Below, piece after piece: positions 3,993-7,987 of a stretch of DNA of 64,000 nt. The stretch is from the IMG/VR virus record IMGVR_UViG_3300009093_000035, positions 1-64,000 of that record; one strand, written 5' to 3'. The notes beneath the pieces were generated by a model. That model ran no database searches. It saw only the letters and a list, made by a program, of their open reading frames with translations, and was not told the DNA's origin. The number at the start of each line of letters is the position of its first letter. Within the stretch, counting starts at the first letter, position 1. Position numbers and translations under genes: made by a program.

Positions 3993-4065
3993 CCTGTAAT
4001 ACGAGCGCATCGACCCCATCATTTCGAGTGGGCATTTACGAATATTTCAGGATACGGAGGATGTC

Positions 4066-4753
4066 ATGGAAAGCGTGATCGTAGAGATTCGAGCTGGAGA
4101 AGGCGGAGATGACGCGAAGCTTCTGGTGAAGGAGCAGTTCGTTGTGTATGTGCGCCTGATCGAGCGGAGGGGTCTTTGACTGCTTCATCGTAGACGAGCG
4201 CCCCGGCTTCCTCTCGTTCCAAGTGAGCGGGAAGGTGGCACGCTCGACCTTCTCTCAGGAATCCGGAGGGCACCGCTGGCAGCGCGTACCTCCGAACGAG
4301 AAGAGGGGACGAGTCCAGACCTCGACCGTCACTGTAGCGGTCCTCGACGAACCGAAGGAGTCGGAGCTTCGGATCGAGGAGAGAGACATCGAGTGGCAGA
4401 CCTGTCGCGGTAGCGGAGCCGGTGGTCAGCACCGGAACGTCACCAACTCGGCCGTCCAGATGACCCACCTCCCTACCGGGATCCGAGTCCGCGTCGAGAA
4501 CGAGCGCTCCCAGCACCAGAACCGAGAGACAGCCCTCCGGGTCCTACGAGCCCGCGTACACGAAGCGCGGACGTCGGCGGCTACCTCGGCTCGGGAAGAC
4601 TCCCGACGGGCGCAGGTGGGCTCGGGGATGCGAGGGGACAAGGTCCGGACGATCCGCGCTCAGGACGGCCAAGTCACGGACCACCGACCGAACGGCGGTC
4701 AGATCCGGTACAAGGACTACATCCGCGGGAACTGGGAAGGCCTTCTGAGATAA
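4066..4753 (+). CDS. class I peptide chain release factor-like protein (RF1-like, no domain 1), expressed through a programmed +1 frameshift, 228 aa
   Basis: ORF1 4066-4179 (MESVIVEIRAGEGGDDAKLL...RRGL*) has a GGAGG RBS. The +1 frame from GAC 4178 continues DCFIVDERPG...ESGGHRWQRVPPNEKRGRVQTSTVTVAV...SGAGGQHRN...THLPTG...ERSQHQN to TAA 4751-4753. Confidence 0.92.
4166..4180 (+). promoter_or_regulatory. prfB-type +1 ribosomal frameshift cassette (internal SD, 3-nt spacer, CTT TGA C)
   Basis: GGAGG (4166-4170), GGT, CTT (4174-4176), TGA (4177-4179), C. Same geometry as the RF2 AGGGGG-UAU-CUU-UGA-C site. Confidence 0.9.
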
Positions 4754-4757
4754 GGAA

Positions 4758-5876
4758 TCAGGGCGTAGTCCCCACCCAGCCGCAGTACTGAGGGTAGATC
4801 GCGGCTGCCATGGCCGGCCCCTCGCTCGCGTTTGGGTGTAGACCGTCCGACTTCGCCAACGTCATCCCAGCGAACGTATGGTCTGCGATCACATTCTGAC
4901 CGCCGCTGACCGCCGTCGCGATCACGCCGGGGAGGTAATTTGCGTTCCAGTCAAGCACTTGAGCCGTAATCGGCGCACTCGCCGAGTACTGGAGCAGGTC
5001 CATCGCGATGACCTTGGCTTGCGGCATCTTGCTCTTGATGTCCGCCAACAAGGCTGCGTATCTCACGGCCAGCTGAGCGTTCGTCTGGCCGTCGCTCACT
5101 ATGTCATTGATGCCGATCAGAAGCGGAATGACGTCCGGGACGAAACGAGTACCGAACGCATACGTCGCCGAATCGAGATTCGCCTGTAGCGTGACGGTCG
5201 TTAGGCCACCACCGGCCAAACAACGATCTCTCGCGAAGGGTGTGAACGCTGGCTTCAGCGGTCCGACAGGACGAAACGGAGCGCCTCCGTCGGGCCGCGC
5301 GTCGATTGTGGCTTGAGTAAGACCGCGCCACTGAGCGATGTTGCCGGCTTGGGCGGTAATCGAATCGCCCATGAAGCAGACTTCTTTCGCCCCAGCGTAG
5401 CTGCTCGTCCCCCACTTCGTAGCGACGTACGCCTTAGCCTGAGATAGCTCCGTAGGAGAGGGCGCCGTCTTGCGCATGAAGATACAACCGAGCGCGACGT
5501 TAGCGCAAACCGTGCCGGTGTATCCTGCACCGACGAAACCCGTGTTGGTCAGCGCTGAGAGTACAGATGGCGTGCCAGTGTGTTCCTTATCGTTGTCGAC
5601 GCTGACGTAGGCTACGCCGCCGACGATACGGCAATGCACAGCGTACGATCGACCGTCTGCGTAGAGCGGGGCGAAGCCGGTAATGCCATAGGGCGTCGAG
5701 CCCGTACCGAGGTCGGCGCCAGACTGAGTCACCTGAACCATGTACGGTGCGGCGCTGCCGGCGCTAACGATGCCGGGGGAGCTGTAGTACGAGGTCGGGG
5801 TGGGGTCGGCGGGAAGCGCGACCGGCGTCACGACGACGATCCACCAACCCTCTGTAGTGGTTACGACAGAGGAGGC
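4758..5876 (-). CDS. 3' part of SGNH/GDSL esterase tail-associated protein B (5' end lies inside the inverted segment; 453 aa when reconstituted)
   Basis: FMGDSIT, LLIGIND and SDGLHP catalytic blocks. The frame reads ASSVVTTTEGWWIVVVTP from the junction at 5876. Confidence 0.8.
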   Translation of the reverse strand, partial: ASSVVTTTEGWWIVVVTPVALPADPTPTSYYSSPGIVSAGSAAPYMVQVTQSGADLGTGSTPYGITGFAPLYADGRSYAVHCRIVGGVAYVSVDNDKEHTGTPSVLSALTNTGFVGAGYTGTVCANVALGCIFMRKTAPSPTELSQAKAYVATKWGTSSYAGAKEVCFMGDSITAQAGNIAQWRGLTQATIDARPDGGAPFRPVGPLKPAFTPFARDRCLAGGGLTTVTLQANLDSATYAFGTRFVPDVIPLLIGINDIVSDGQTNAQLAVRYAALLADIKSKMPQAKVIAMDLLQYSASAPITAQVLDWNANYLPGVIATAVSGGQNVIADHTFAGMTLAKSDGLHPNASEGPAMAAAIYPQYCGWVGTTP

Positions 5877-6199
5877 AGCGGAGCCGACATCGCTATCGGA
5901 AACGCCCGCTTCGCCGATATCCCCTCTTGGGTTGCGGCGGCTTGAAGGACTGACCCATGGGTTTTCGAGCTTCTCAGGCGGGAGGGAGGTCCAGAGGACT
6001 AGCGTCTCTGGATATCCTCAATCCTCAGCGTCTTCAAGATGAGCGTGGTATCACTATCAGCTCATGGCCCAATAACGGTAGTGCGGGCGGATCTAGCGCT
6101 CAGGGAACTGCGGCCAACCAGCCCACCGTCACTACTATCGGCGGCAAGGCTGCGCTCCTTTTCGACGGCAGCAACGACGTACTGGCCGACTCGTTCGCT
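5877..6199. other. 323-bp inverted segment carrying the 3' end of gene A and the 5' end of gene B
   Basis: The + strand encodes GADIAIGNARFADIPSWVAAA* (to 5945) and MGFRASQAGGR...FDGSNDVLADSFA (5957-6199) between minus-strand genes. Ends are AGCG (5877-5880) and CGCT (6196-6199); flipping restores both frames. Confidence 0.85.
5957..6199 (+). CDS. N-terminal 81 aa of SGNH tail protein B, in inverted orientation
   Basis: AAGGA RBS. MGFRASQAGGRS parallels gene A MPFRAAISGGRA. SSWPNNG...QGTAANQPT...LLFDGSND is typical tail lectin-like sequence. Confidence 0.75.
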
Positions 6200-7987
6200 C
6201 GGCTGAGACGGGTGGATCTGATCGCCCAGGAAGGTGATGAACGGGGAGATGTCGGCGGGGGTCGTACTACGAACGGCCTTGAACCCGGCGTTGTGGAGAG
6301 CCGTAACGATAGCCGGGTGACCCGCGTTGACCGCCGCGAAAGTAGCCGCGTTGGGGGAACCCGGGCAGATGTACAGGTCGTCTACGACGAACAGGGCCGT
6401 CGGGAAGAGGGCCGCCAGAGCCAACATGAAGGTCTGTTTGTCGGCGAGAACCGTCGCTGCTGAGTGACCGCTGACGATGACGTCATTCGTACCGATGTTG
6501 ACGATGATCACCAGCTTGCGGCGACCAACGGACCAGTCTCCCGGAAGGGCGCCCCACGAAGACCCGCTGAGGTACGTCGTGAGAGAAGAGATCGCGTTGC
6601 CGTTGTGGGCGAAGCACAGGTCCTGAGGGAAAGCGATCGCCGCCTCCGAAAGGGGTCCCACGGCATTGTAGATACGACCCGACACGGGTCCAGCGTCGAA
6701 GAGACCCTGGAGGTACTTCCTCCACTGGGCGATGTTGGCGGTACCCGAGCCGCCCGACGTGATCGAGTCTCCCCACCACATGAAGTCCACGGCGGAGGGG
6801 GTCGATACCGTCACGGACGGGATACCGATGGGTCCGATCCCGCGAGGATCCACCCGGCAATCGGCCTCATTCCCCGAACTTCCGTAGACGCCTCCGAGAC
6901 CGATGTTCGTAGCGGTCCAGGTCCACGGAGTTCCGGCGCTACCCGCGACTCCATTGACGCTTACGATCGCCGTAGCGGGATTCCAAGCAACCACCCCTAG
7001 GAGAGCGTGGAACGTGAAGACGAGGTACCCGCTGGCCGCCTTCACGGTTCCGCCCTGAACGGCCTCGATTCGAACGCCCGTCCCGTCGTGTCGGAAACGG
7101 ATACCGTTGTTCGCGTCGTCGAACGTGACGAGCCAACGGATATCCCCGCTGAACATCTCAGTAGAGGCGAAGTTCGGAGAGACCTGGTAGAACTGAGCGG
7201 CCTTCGAGAGAATCAGGGGGTTGAAGGTAGAGACCGGCGCGACGTCTCGTCCTCGCGGATGACCCGCGGTCCCGTATTGGTTGGTGTTGCGGATCGCGCT
7301 CGTGGGATAGTTCCCCGGCTCGCTGCTCACGAAGTCGTAGACGCCGTCTCGAACGCCTGCGGTGAGACCACCGTGCCCACTCAGGTCATCGTTCTCCGAG
7401 AGCATCATCTGGGACTCGCCGCCGTTCGCGGCTACGCGAACCCGGTAACGACGCCACGTCTCGGTAAGGACGGTTTCACCCTGGCTGGTCTGATTCCCCG
7501 CGGGACCGCCGGTGTACAGATTGATACAGGCCGGACCCGTACCTCCGATACTAGCTCTCGCCCAGGCGCTTCCAGCCATTGGGGCGCTGAGAGCCGCCAC
7601 GTTTACGTTCTGGCGCCAACGGAGAGTCGCGTCCCCAGCAGTCTGAACGCGAGTAGCCTTTCGACCATCCGGGCCTTCCACGTAAGAGCCCGTGACCGTA
7701 ACGCCACCTTGGTTCGACCAAGGCGATAGAGTGATGTCACGGGAGTGACCCGTTTGACTGGTCGTACCGCGTTCGAGGAGTAGCATCTTCCCTGCCCCGT
7801 CGTTCCGGTCTTCATACCGGGGAACGTTGGACGCGGCGAAGTCCATGAACGAAGTGGACACGCCCGTAGAAGGCGAGGTCGTCAGGAACGTACCCTCAGT
7901 GGTACGTGTGAAGGGGATCTGAGAGAAATCCACGAACGGTGTCGGGGTCGACGCCCGTCCTCCACTAATGGCTGCTCTGAAAGGCAT
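6062..7987 (-). CDS. SGNH/GDSL esterase tail-associated protein A (last ~44 aa derive from the inverted segment; 618 aa when reconstituted)
   Basis: N-terminal phage spike-like region (FTRTTEGT...PRYED...LLLE), then WGDSIT, IVNIGTND and GDQIHP. Confidence 0.8.
   Translation of the reverse strand: MPFRAAISGGRASTPTPFVDFSQIPFTRTTEGTFLTTSPSTGVSTSFMDFAASNVPRYEDRNDGAGKMLLLERGTTSQTGHSRDITLSPWSNQGGVTVTGSYVEGPDGRKATRVQTAGDATLRWRQNVNVAALSAPMAGSAWARASIGGTGPACINLYTGGPAGNQTSQGETVLTETWRRYRVRVAANGGESQMMLSENDDLSGHGGLTAGVRDGVYDFVSSEPGNYPTSAIRNTNQYGTAGHPRGRDVAPVSTFNPLILSKAAQFYQVSPNFASTEMFSGDIRWLVTFDDANNGIRFRHDGTGVRIEAVQGGTVKAASGYLVFTFHALLGVVAWNPATAIVSVNGVAGSAGTPWTWTATNIGLGGVYGSSGNEADCRVDPRGIGPIGIPSVTVSTPSAVDFMWWGDSITSGGSGTANIAQWRKYLQGLFDAGPVSGRIYNAVGPLSEAAIAFPQDLCFAHNGNAISSLTTYLSGSSWGALPGDWSVGRRKLVIIVNIGTNDVIVSGHSAATVLADKQTFMLALAALFPTALFVVDDLYICPGSPNAATFAAVNAGHPAIVTALHNAGFKAVRSTTPADISPFITFLGDQIHPSQPSERVGQYVVAAVEKERSLAADSSDGGLVGRSSLSARSARTTVIGP

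What the first reader, a model, noticed from the sequence alone, without database searches (positions are those of the whole stretch)
4178..4753. Non-canonical stop-recognition loop (PPN) in a domain-1-less class I release factor
Seen: HRWQRVPPNEKRGRVQTS aligns without gaps to RF1 HRVQRVPATESQGRIHTS and RF2 HRLVRKSPFDSGGRRHTS. The tripeptide is PPN (neither PxT nor SPF) and the conserved His of HTS is Gln; GGQ is intact. Established: domain 1 mediates RF3 interaction, and PrfH-type rescue factors also lack it. Inference: altered or relaxed specificity. A UGA-gated gene would be autoregulatory only if this RF1-like protein reads UGA; otherwise it cross-senses RF2 or acts in ribosome rescue.
Basis: partly seen in the sequence, partly recalled or inferred. 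Interest (0 to 1): 0.75.

Follow-up and report, generated by a model that had tools for sequence, protein, structure and literature searches.

The report
Frameshift-gated, domain-1-less RF1-like release factor
A huge phage carries a shortened relative of bacterial release factor 1 that can only be made if the ribosome slips +1 at a stop codon, as in the classic RF2 gene; the same gated gene is found in many other huge phages and in myxobacterial chromosomes, and I found no paper describing it.

Summary
The +1-frame ORF at 4178-4753 aligns without gaps to solved RF1s and carries PPN (Thr186 to Asn), Gln for His193 and an intact GGQ. No domain 1 is encoded.

PPN is not a singular oddity. In 149 distinct relatives (72 phage, 77 from cellular assemblies) the tripeptide ends in Thr in 94 and Asn in 40, with about 20 switches on the tree. 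The other stop-codon contacts (Gly116/117, Gln181, Thr194) are kept.

The larger feature lies just upstream. A 37-codon ORF (4066-4176) encodes the missing start of RF1 domain 2. It ends in GGAGG-GGT-CTT-TGA-C, the prfB +1 frameshift cassette. The gate is conserved, but its stop codon varies: TGA 106, TAG 28, TAA 6. Some relatives have an in-frame stop instead, in standard-code genomes, and one clade has the gate at a second site.

Gate codon and decoding loop do not co-vary. One protein pair is 96.8% identical yet has UGA versus UAG.

Best reading: a third, RF3-independent, RF1-derived release factor. Its synthesis is switched on by slow termination. Its codon specificity is untested.

The family occurs in huge phages and patchily in Myxococcota, which also keep prfA and prfB.

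The parts
4056..4060 (+). Shine-Dalgarno GGAGG for the 0-frame start, 5 nt before ATG 4066
   Evidence: Read directly from the sequence.
4066..4176 (+). 0-frame ORF, codons 1-37 (piece 1): start of RF1 domain 2 with the helix alpha-5 tip (Gly13-Gly14-Asp15-Asp16)
   Evidence: Translation. PCRF positions 100-134 at 4.6e-06 and RF1 models positions 104-138. Aligns to T. thermophilus RF1 107-139. tblastn finds it directly upstream of piece 2 in 76 related loci.
4111..4113 (+). Asp16 codon at the position of RF1 Glu119, which contacts U1 of the stop codon
   Evidence: Alignment to T. thermophilus RF1. Role of Glu119 from PMC3974865. Asp is the usual state across the family's piece-1 sequences.
4166..4170 (+). 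Internal Shine-Dalgarno-like GGAGG, 3 nt upstream of the slippery CTT
   Evidence: In 45 distinct phage sites, positions -9..-4 read CGGAGG in 30-40 of 45. This is the same element and spacing as in prfB (PMC12421855).
4174..4180 (+). +1 frameshift site CTT TGA C (slippery CTT_T, 0-frame stop TGA 4177-4179, weak-context C)
   Evidence: CTT and the following T are present in 45 of 45 sites and C follows the stop in 36 of 45. The same site occurs in cellular homologues.
4178..4753 (+). +1-frame ORF (piece 2, 191 codons plus TAA stop 4751-4753): rest of domain 2, domain 3 (GGQ) and domain 4
   Evidence: The AlphaFold2 model has pLDDT 88.4 and matches ribosome-bound RF1 best, with TM 0.86-0.89.
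4289..4297 (+). Tripeptide Pro-Pro-Asn (RF1 Pro184-x-Thr186)
   Evidence: Family states: Thr 94, Asn 40, Ser 6, loop deleted 4.
4316..4318 (+). Gln47 at the position of RF1 His193, which stacks on the second stop-codon base
   Evidence: Family states: His 107, Gln 39.
4421..4429 (+). GGQ catalytic motif
   Evidence: Invariant in the 41-sequence alignment.

Best explanation
The locus encodes a 228-residue class I release factor derived from RF1. It has lost domain 1, the RF3-interacting domain, and keeps domains 2-4.

It is translated from two frames. Ribosomes start at ATG 4066, read 37 codons and reach CTT TGA C. If a release factor acts on the UGA, only a 37-residue peptide is made. If termination is slow, the internal GGAGG three bases upstream and the slippery CUU_U let peptidyl-tRNA-Leu slip +1. 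GAC (4178) is then read and the full factor is made. This is the mechanism established for prfB.

Output therefore rises when termination at the gate codon is inefficient. The product is most likely an active, stop-codon-dependent peptidyl-tRNA hydrolase that works without RF3. It would be a back-up or supplementary terminator for the phage and, in Myxococcota, for the cell. Asn186 and Gln193 are tolerated family variants.

Shown here: homology, the two-frame architecture, conservation of the gate, and the lack of co-variation between gate codon and decoding loop.

Inferred: that frameshifting occurs, that it responds to release-factor availability, that the protein is catalytically active, and its codon range.
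For: RF1 identity. NCBIfam RF1 models score 193-194 bits, against RF2 131, PrfH 82 and ArfB 39. The alignment to solved RF1s is gapless. The AF2 model matches ribosome-bound RF1 at TM 0.86-0.89, RF2 at 0.77-0.84 and PrfH at 0.59.

Two-frame gene. Pieces 1 and 2 are collinear on the RF1 model, at positions 104-138 and 158-330. They are offset by exactly one base in 76 loci. The +1 frame is closed 6 codons upstream of the site.

Cassette. GGAGG-N3-CTT-TGA-C occurs once in the window with 0 expected. The logo over 45 distinct phage sites reproduces the prfB motif (PMC12421855). The same cassette is present in 74 of 77 cellular homologues.

Selection for 'a stop here'. Of 149 family members 140 are gated, 7 are ungated and 2 are unresolved. 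There are 24 changes of stop identity on the tree. Sister sequences carry an in-frame TGA versus an in-frame TAG at the same codon (L022/L026). A second gate site in another clade shows a +1 frameshift at TGA, an in-frame TGA or an in-frame TAG. The genomes with in-frame TGA use the standard code.

Functional decoding head. Gly30, Gly31, His32, Arg33, Gln35 (Gln181) and GGQ are invariant. Pro38, Pro39 and Thr48 (Thr194) are at least 90% conserved.

Third paralogue. The five myxobacterial genomes tested hold full-length prfA and prfB as well.
Against: There is no experimental evidence of any kind.

Three of the six residues that contact the stop codon in RF1 are changed in this protein: Glu119 to Asp, Thr186 to Asn and His193 to Gln. 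Canonical UAA/UAG reading is therefore an assumption.

An RF1-type factor should not read the UGA that gates it, so for most members the loop cannot be simple autoregulation as in prfB.

Loss of domain 1 may weaken function in vivo.

No conserved neighbour gene points to a pathway.

Four relatives have lost the tripeptide loop altogether, which shows that the family can drift away from codon reading.
Confidence: 0.6

Rival explanations
1. The factor reads all three stop codons, or at least both UGA and UAG. Any stop codon in the gate would then give true prfB-style autoregulation. Asn186, the central Pro and Asp119 would contribute to relaxed second-base reading.
For: The gate codon flips freely between TGA, TAG and TAA, with 24 changes on the tree. 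It also flips between proteins that are 96.8% identical with no difference in the decoding loop (L126 versus L130). In prfB, where autoregulation is codon-specific, TAG was never seen in 8,164 genomes (PMC12421855). Thr186 to Asn accompanies the re-use of UGA as a stop in algal mtRF1a (PMC6821328). Among phage loci the Asn type sits in higher-GC DNA (0.575 versus 0.493, p 0.0025, not corrected for phylogeny). This phage ends 64% of its genes in TGA.
Against: Gln181 and Thr194 are conserved, and in RF1 they accept G at the third base. Relaxed second-base reading would therefore also hit UGG (Trp). Asn versus Thr shows no link with the gate codon. Most members carry the canonical PxT. The independent-pairs test was too weak to reach significance.
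Confidence: 0.2
2. The gate is only a fixed attenuator or timing device that keeps a potentially toxic release factor at low level. It would have no meaningful sensing of release-factor availability.
For: The identity of the stop is not conserved, and frameshift and read-through versions are interchangeable. Over-expression of release factors reduces fitness in B. subtilis (PMC12421855).
Against: A rare sense codon or a weak start would attenuate equally well, yet the gated members all use a stop codon. Any stop codon in the A site necessarily competes with release factors, so some dependence on their activity is unavoidable.
Confidence: 0.12
3. It is a codon-independent ribosome rescue factor of the PrfH or ArfB kind, acting on damaged or non-stop ribosomes.
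For: It lacks domain 1, like PrfH. Many phage relatives sit in tRNA arrays and one lies next to a tmRNA gene. A subclade has deleted the tripeptide loop.
Against: The PrfH model scores 82 bits against a cut-off of 166.65, and ArfB scores 39 against 100. The fold match to PrfH is TM 0.59, against 0.86-0.89 for RF1. No RtcB was found in the 248-kb record. The residues that read the stop codon are conserved across the family.
Confidence: 0.06
4. It is a broken gene or an assembly error, or it encodes two separate small products.
For: A single base separates the frames. One assembly (Nannocystis pusilla, L152) shows extra indels.
Against: The same one-base offset with the same cassette occurs in well over 100 independent assemblies. 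These share 45-79% protein identity, and both pieces are conserved. There is no Shine-Dalgarno sequence before the first +1-frame start (GTG 4223), and a product from there would lack part of domain 2.
Confidence: 0.02

Closest known systems
prfB (RF2) programmed +1 frameshift
   Same: It has the same cassette: a purine-rich SD-like element 3 nt upstream of CUU, a stop codon and a following C. It sits in a release-factor gene, and the downstream frame encodes the functional protein.
   Different: The host gene is RF1-type, not RF2. The site lies inside domain 2 (codon 37/38 of a domain-1-less protein), not at codon 26 of domain 1. The stop is TGA, TAG or TAA (106/28/6), whereas TAG is never found in prfB. 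Relatives replace the frameshift with an in-frame stop. The product is not expected to read the commonest gate codon.
Bacterial RF1 (PrfA)
   Same: Domains 2-4 are about 40-47% identical. GGQ, Gln181, Thr194 and Gly116/117 are kept, and the family consensus PPT fits PxT. The model superposes on ribosome-bound RF1.
   Different: There is no domain 1. The score is far below NCBI's equivalog cut-offs (194 versus 400 and 423). Family-wide changes are Glu119 to Asp and Val180 to Trp. This member has Asn186 and Gln193. The carrier genomes that were tested already have a normal prfA.
PrfH (RFH), the RtcB-linked rescue factor
   Same: It is a class I release-factor homologue without domain 1 and with an intact GGQ.
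   Different: It fails the PrfH model (82 versus 166.65 bits). No RtcB partner was found. The decoding-loop residues are kept. The fold match is weaker (TM 0.59).
Giant-virus (Mimivirus/Megavirus) release-factor gene needing read-through and frameshifting
   Same: It is a virus-encoded termination factor whose own synthesis requires recoding at stop codons. This is stated in PMC5009743; the paper itself, PMC3521657, was listed.
   Different: That factor is of the eukaryotic or archaeal eRF1 type in an amoeba virus. This one is a bacterial-type RF1 derivative in phages and bacteria.
Scenedesmaceae mitochondrial mtRF1a with Thr186 to Asn
   Same: It has the same substitution at the residue that discriminates A from G at the second stop-codon base.
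   Different: There it comes with loss of Gln181 and a Ser at position 206. Here Gln181 is kept and position 206 is Lys. The link to UGA is a hypothesis in that paper too.
RF1/RF2 genes of stop-codon-recoded phages (Lak, Agate, Jade)
   Same: They are release-factor genes carried by large phages.
   Different: Those are discussed as tools for switching the genetic code. This phage uses the standard code with TGA as its main stop and carries no suppressor tRNA.

Membership tests
Bacterial RF1 (PrfA) | RF-1 catalytic domain with GGQ | tested here: met
   PF00472 scores 105 bits against a cut-off of 35. GGQ is at residues 82-84 of piece 2.
Bacterial RF1 (PrfA) | PxT tripeptide in the domain 2 recognition loop | tested here: not met
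   This protein has PPN. The family majority has PPT: Thr 94 of 149, Asn 40.
Bacterial RF1 (PrfA) | Third-base readers Gln181 and Thr194, and the Gly116/Gly117 helix tip | tested here: met
   Gapless mapping to T. thermophilus RF1. Gln35 is invariant and Thr48 is at least 90% conserved. Roles are taken from PMC3974865.
Bacterial RF1 (PrfA) | N-terminal domain 1 (RF3-interacting helical domain) | tested here: not met
   The matches begin at RF1 model position 104. The ATG lies 3 codons before the domain 2 motif, and no upstream coding room exists.
Bacterial RF1 (PrfA) | Score above NCBIfam equivalog cut-off | tested here: not met
   Scores are 194 and 193 bits against cut-offs of 400 and 423. 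The pieces were scored apart.
RF2 (PrfB) | SPF tripeptide and best match to the RF2 model | tested here: not met
   The tripeptide is PPN. RF2 scores 131 bits against 194 for RF1, with a cut-off of 370.
prfB-type +1 programmed frameshift cassette | SD-like element 3 nt upstream of CUU, 0-frame stop, following C, protein continuing in the +1 frame | tested here: met
   GGAGG at 4166-4170, GGT, CTT at 4174-4176, TGA at 4177-4179, C at 4180. The pieces are collinear on RF1. The logo was built over 45 sites.
prfB-type +1 programmed frameshift cassette | Autoregulation: the gate stop codon is one that the product itself reads | not testable with these tools
   The gate codon varies (TGA/TAG/TAA) and does not co-vary with the decoding loop. 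This differs from prfB, but the product's specificity is unknown.
PrfH (RFH) | Score above the TIGR03072 cut-off | tested here: not met
   82.4 bits against a cut-off of 166.65.
PrfH (RFH) | Operon partner RtcB | tested here: not met
   No PF01139 match was found in the 248-kb record, which is 56% complete, so absence is not proven. No RtcB was seen among flanking genes of three myxobacterial loci.
ArfB | GGQ domain plus C-terminal tail, no codon-recognition domain | tested here: not met
   39 bits against a cut-off of 100. PCRF domain 2/4 is present.

The most novel reading that the evidence does not exclude
The family is a natural bacterial-type 'omnipotent' class I release factor. It would read UAA, UAG and UGA, or act on any ribosome paused at a stop. 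Whatever stop codon sits in its gate would then close a true autoregulatory loop. The gene would be a termination-stress circuit that Myxococcota and huge phages share and exchange.
Probability: 0.2. Interest if true: 0.9.

Novelty: new variant of a known kind. Interest (0 to 1): 0.78.

Why it matters
Programmed frameshifting in prfB is the textbook case of a gene that senses its own product. A 2016 review of recoding and a 2025 survey of 12,753 genomes both state that no counterpart is known for RF1 genes or with UAG (PMC5009743, PMC12421855).

This locus belongs to a large family that fills that gap in an unexpected way. The family is an RF1-derived factor without domain 1. It uses the prfB cassette or an in-frame stop, with any of the three stop codons, in two kinds of carrier: huge phages and myxobacteria.

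Two questions become testable. What does a cell or a phage gain from a third release factor that is made only when termination falters? Can an RF1-type decoding head with Asn186, Gln193 and Asp119 read UGA?

Cultured carriers exist for such tests: Nannocystis exedens DSM 71, Archangium gephyra, Minicystis rosea DSM 24000 and Pyxidicoccus fallax DSM 14698.

The gene is also routinely mis-called as a truncated protein of about 190 residues. Such truncated calls are common among the library representatives.

Tried and rejected
- **DNA similarity to GenBank phages.** There was no meaningful match. A protein search found only uncultured huge phages among the closer relatives; one of them, LR745208.1, carries the cassette.
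- **Conserved neighbours.** None were found. Even the 79%-identical relative shares no flanking gene. The window neighbours are DUF7227, a cytidylyltransferase-like gene and two GDSL hydrolases. The myxobacterial flanks are unrelated cellular genes.
- **Partner genes in the phage record.** No RtcB, SmpB or PrmC was found, but the record is incomplete.
- **Defence-system models.** No hit.
- **Downstream RNA structure as frameshift stimulator.** z = -0.47, so nothing.
- **Code 4 as the explanation of in-frame TGA in relatives.** Rejected. ORF coverage under the standard code is 0.77-0.95 and is not specifically improved by reading TGA as sense. No suppressor tRNA lies nearby.
- **Second cassette-like string at genome position 226,866.** No frame logic around it, so it is a chance match.
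- **Link between Asn186 and the gate codon.** None.
- **Link between Asn186 and GC.** The raw p-value is 0.0025, but there are too few independent contrasts.
- **Strict DNA pattern for GGHRWQR(V/I)PP.** It hit only the query genome itself among the 151 searched across that genome's phylum, but 18 of 61 genomes of the Nannocystis family. The gene is therefore patchy and not a phylum-wide core gene.
- **Literature.** Seven full-text searches found no description of this family. Only open-access papers and preprints were searchable.

Full report
**Setting**

The window is the first 64 kb of a 248.6-kb IMG/VR virus record with 61% GC, estimated 56% complete. The record carries 45 tRNA genes and a tmRNA at 188-200 kb and no suppressor tRNA.

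It uses the standard code. ORFs of at least 150 codons cover 0.92-0.97 of two 20-kb samples. Of 235 GC3-filtered genes, 150 end in TGA, 61 in TAG and 24 in TAA.

**The observation**

Translating 4178-4750 gives the reported sequence. It aligns without gaps to solved RF1 chains: T. maritima at E 1.9e-43, E. coli at about 1e-40, and T. thermophilus residues 158-317. RF2 and PrfH score much lower.

In T. thermophilus numbering:
- Kept: Gln181, Thr194 and GGQ230.
- Changed: Thr186 is Asn and His193 is Gln.

The roles of these residues are stated in PMC3974865. Gly116, Glu119 and Thr186 bind U1. Thr186 and His193 contact the second base. Gln181 and Thr194 contact the third base.

Family models rank RF1 (194 bits) above RF2 (131), PrfH (82, cut-off 167) and ArfB (39).

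An AlphaFold2 model of piece 2 has pLDDT 88.4. It superposes best on ribosome-bound RF1 (TM 0.86-0.89), less well on RF2 (0.77-0.84) and poorly on PrfH (0.59).

**What lies upstream**

The coordinate 4178 is not a start codon. A 37-codon ORF runs from ATG 4066, with GGAGG five bases before it, to TGA 4177-4179. It encodes the beginning of RF1 domain 2 and aligns to T. thermophilus RF1 107-139, with Gly116 and Gly117 kept and Glu119 replaced by Asp.

The two pieces are collinear on the RF1 models, at positions 104-138 and 158-330. The junction reads GGAGG GGT CTT TGA C (4166-4180). These are the elements and the spacing of the prfB +1 frameshift site as described in PMC12421855. The string occurs once in the window, with 0.00 expected by chance.

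No domain 1 can be encoded. Only 22 start-less codons are open upstream of the ATG.

The gene is therefore join(4066..4176, 4178..4753), giving 228 residues.

**Relatives in phages**

A scan of IMG/VR gave 244 confirmed relatives, of which the best 80 were kept. Many come from contigs of 100-467 kb. All of those read upstream start just before the domain 2 motif, so the whole family lacks domain 1.

Forty-five distinct phage sites carry the cassette:
- CGGAGG at positions -9 to -4 in 30-40 of 45.
- CTT and the following T in 45 of 45.
- C after the stop in 36 of 45.

The stop is TGA in 33, TAG in 8 and TAA in 4. A huge phage from the 2020 survey set, LR745208.1, also carries the cassette.

Other relatives have an in-frame stop at the same place, where RF1 has a conserved Trp:
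- A clade of 14 has TGA (L066-L081 and kin).
- The sister pair L022/L026 has TGA in one and TAG in the other.
- The phages with in-frame TGA use the standard code and show no suppressor tRNA nearby.

One further clade has its gate 11-12 codons downstream. There it appears as a frameshift site, an in-frame TGA or an in-frame TAG.

Seven members have no gate.

In many relatives the gene sits inside the phage tRNA array, and in one it lies next to a tmRNA gene. In the window it does not. No flanking gene is shared even with the 79%-identical relative.

**Relatives in cells**

A scan of one genome per prokaryotic species found the same domain-1-less gene, with the same cassette, mostly in Myxococcota. 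Carriers include Archangium gephyra, Pyxidicoccus fallax, Minicystis rosea, eight Nannocystis genomes, and many Kofleriaceae, Polyangiaceae, Haliangiales and Sandaracinaceae assemblies. A few Proteobacteria also carry it, among them Thiobacillus denitrificans.

In these genomes the gene looks resident:
- It has host-like GC3 (0.94-0.98 in Archangium and Nannocystis).
- Its flanks are ordinary cellular genes.
- Its downstream neighbours are shared between two Nannocystis species.
- The five genomes tested also have full-length prfA and prfB, so this is a third paralogue.

A strict DNA pattern for the family's loop found it in 18 of 61 genomes of the Nannocystis family. Among the 151 genomes searched across the phylum it hit only the query genome itself, so the gene is patchy.

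In a tree of 72 phage, 77 cellular and 20 full-length RF1 sequences, the family lies on one side of a branch (SH-aLRT 93). Phage and cellular members are interleaved, with at least 15 label changes, of which at least 3 are forced by strongly supported branches. Myxobacterial families form their own clades. The window sits in a well-supported clade of seven phage sequences.

**What the PPN loop means**

| Feature (149 members) | States | Changes on tree |
|---|---|---|
| Third tripeptide residue | Thr 94, Asn 40, Ser 6, Leu 1, Gly 1, loop deleted 4, undetermined 3 | about 20 for Thr/Asn |
| His193 position | His 107, Gln 39, undetermined 3 | about 21 |

In the window's own clade, four members have PPN, one has PQN and two have PPT. 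Four of 29 full-length RF1-type proteins in the representative library also carry Gln at the His193 position, and all 29 have PxT.

So PPN and Gln193 are recurrent, tolerated states of a family whose consensus is canonical. The rest of the loop is invariant or nearly so.

Asn186 does not follow the gate codon: Asn 30 TGA / 9 TAG, Thr 67 / 18 / 3.

A published precedent ties Thr186 to Asn with renewed use of UGA as a stop in algal mitochondria (PMC6821328). Among phage loci the Asn type lies in higher-GC DNA (p 0.0025, uncorrected). A broadened specificity therefore stays possible but is unsupported here.

**What the gate means**

In prfB the stop is TGA in 98.6% and TAA in 1.4% of 8,164 genomes, and never TAG. 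That paper takes this as proof of RF2 autoregulation and states that no such frameshift is known in prfA. The 2016 recoding review says the counterpart with UAG and RF1 genes is unknown.

Here the stop is TGA in 106, TAG in 28 and TAA in 6, with 24 switches on the tree. Proteins that are 96.8% identical, with identical decoding loops, use TGA in one and TAG in the other (L126/L130). Two further pairs show the same.

Selection thus keeps a stop at this place, by frameshift or read-through and at two sites, but not a particular stop.

Any stop codon in the A site competes with release factors, so output must rise when termination at that codon is slow. This follows from the established prfB mechanism.

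Two readings remain:
- The factor is not the main reader of its own gate, and the gate senses general termination capacity.
- The factor reads all three stops.

I favour the first because the decoding head is RF1-like and Gln181/Thr194 are conserved. The free switching of the gate codon is what the second reading would predict.

**Rejected alternatives and limits**

A pseudogene or an assembly error is excluded by the same one-base offset and cassette in well over 100 independent assemblies. A PrfH-like role fails three tests: the model score, the RtcB partner and the fold match. No downstream RNA structure, defence-system model or conserved neighbour was found.

I found no paper that describes the family, but only open-access literature could be searched.

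All functional statements are inferences. Nothing here measures frameshifting, release activity or codon specificity.

Noticed in passing
own genome 188442-199553 and 224337-224412 (outside the window): There is an array of 45 tRNA genes and a tmRNA (tag ANDSSYDQLAQAA), all on the minus strand. It includes tRNA-Leu(GAG) and tRNA-Leu(AAG), which decode the slippery CUU. No SmpB was found in the record.
   Followed up: partly
L011:3557-3908, and tRNA arrays in L011, L022, L026, L052, L054, L066-L081, L120, L170: In many relatives the release-factor gene lies inside a tRNA array on the same strand. In L011 a tmRNA gene follows it directly. In the window the gene is about 184 kb away from the tRNA array.
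   Followed up: partly
L022, L026, L042, L066-L081 (site A); L058, L059, L062, L063, L065, L067, L173 (site B): The relatives listed for site A replace the frameshift with an in-frame TGA or TAG, although the genomes checked use the standard code. At site A the TGA falls on RF1's conserved Trp codon. The second list is a clade whose gate lies 11-12 codons downstream (site B), as a +1 frameshift in L058 and an in-frame stop in the others. These in-frame stops look like programmed read-through gates.
   Followed up: partly
L034, L042, L050, L082 (LR745208.1): These members have a 4-residue deletion that removes the PxT tripeptide from the recognition loop while keeping the gate and GGQ. They may have moved towards codon-independent action.
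   Followed up: no
L054:1512-1584: ARAGORN reports a tRNA with a four-base anticodon (gatg) in the tRNA array that surrounds a frameshift-gated release-factor gene. It could be a quadruplet-decoding or frameshift-suppressor tRNA.
   Followed up: no
L038, L043, L045, upstream of the release-factor gene: A second, degenerate copy of the N-terminal piece (M-S-I/L-I-V/F-E-I...) ending in TGA lies a few hundred bases upstream of an ungated release-factor gene. It may be the remnant of a duplication.
   Followed up: no
window 4758-5831 (-) and 6062-7987 (-): Two adjacent genes with GDSL/SGNH hydrolase domains converge on the release-factor gene. They may be tail-associated esterases. Upstream lie a DUF7227 protein (1346-2161) and a cytidylyltransferase-like protein (about 2373-2897).
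   Followed up: partly
L152 (Nannocystis pusilla Na p29): The copy in this assembly lacks one T of the CTTT run and has a further frame change upstream, unlike five other Nannocystis genomes. This is either an assembly error or decay of the gene.
   Followed up: no
own genome 226866-226880 (+), outside the window: A second GGAGG-N3-CTT-TGA string occurs here. The surrounding frames give no sign of a two-frame gene, so it was taken as a chance match (about 0.3 expected in the genome).
   Followed up: yes
L096:648-1682 (Archangium gephyra, upstream of its release-factor copy): A neighbouring protein gives weak TIR-domain hits in Pfam (CAP12/Pycsar TIR, 7.7e-4) and PADLOC (4.7e-4). Both are below the cut-offs.
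   Followed up: partly
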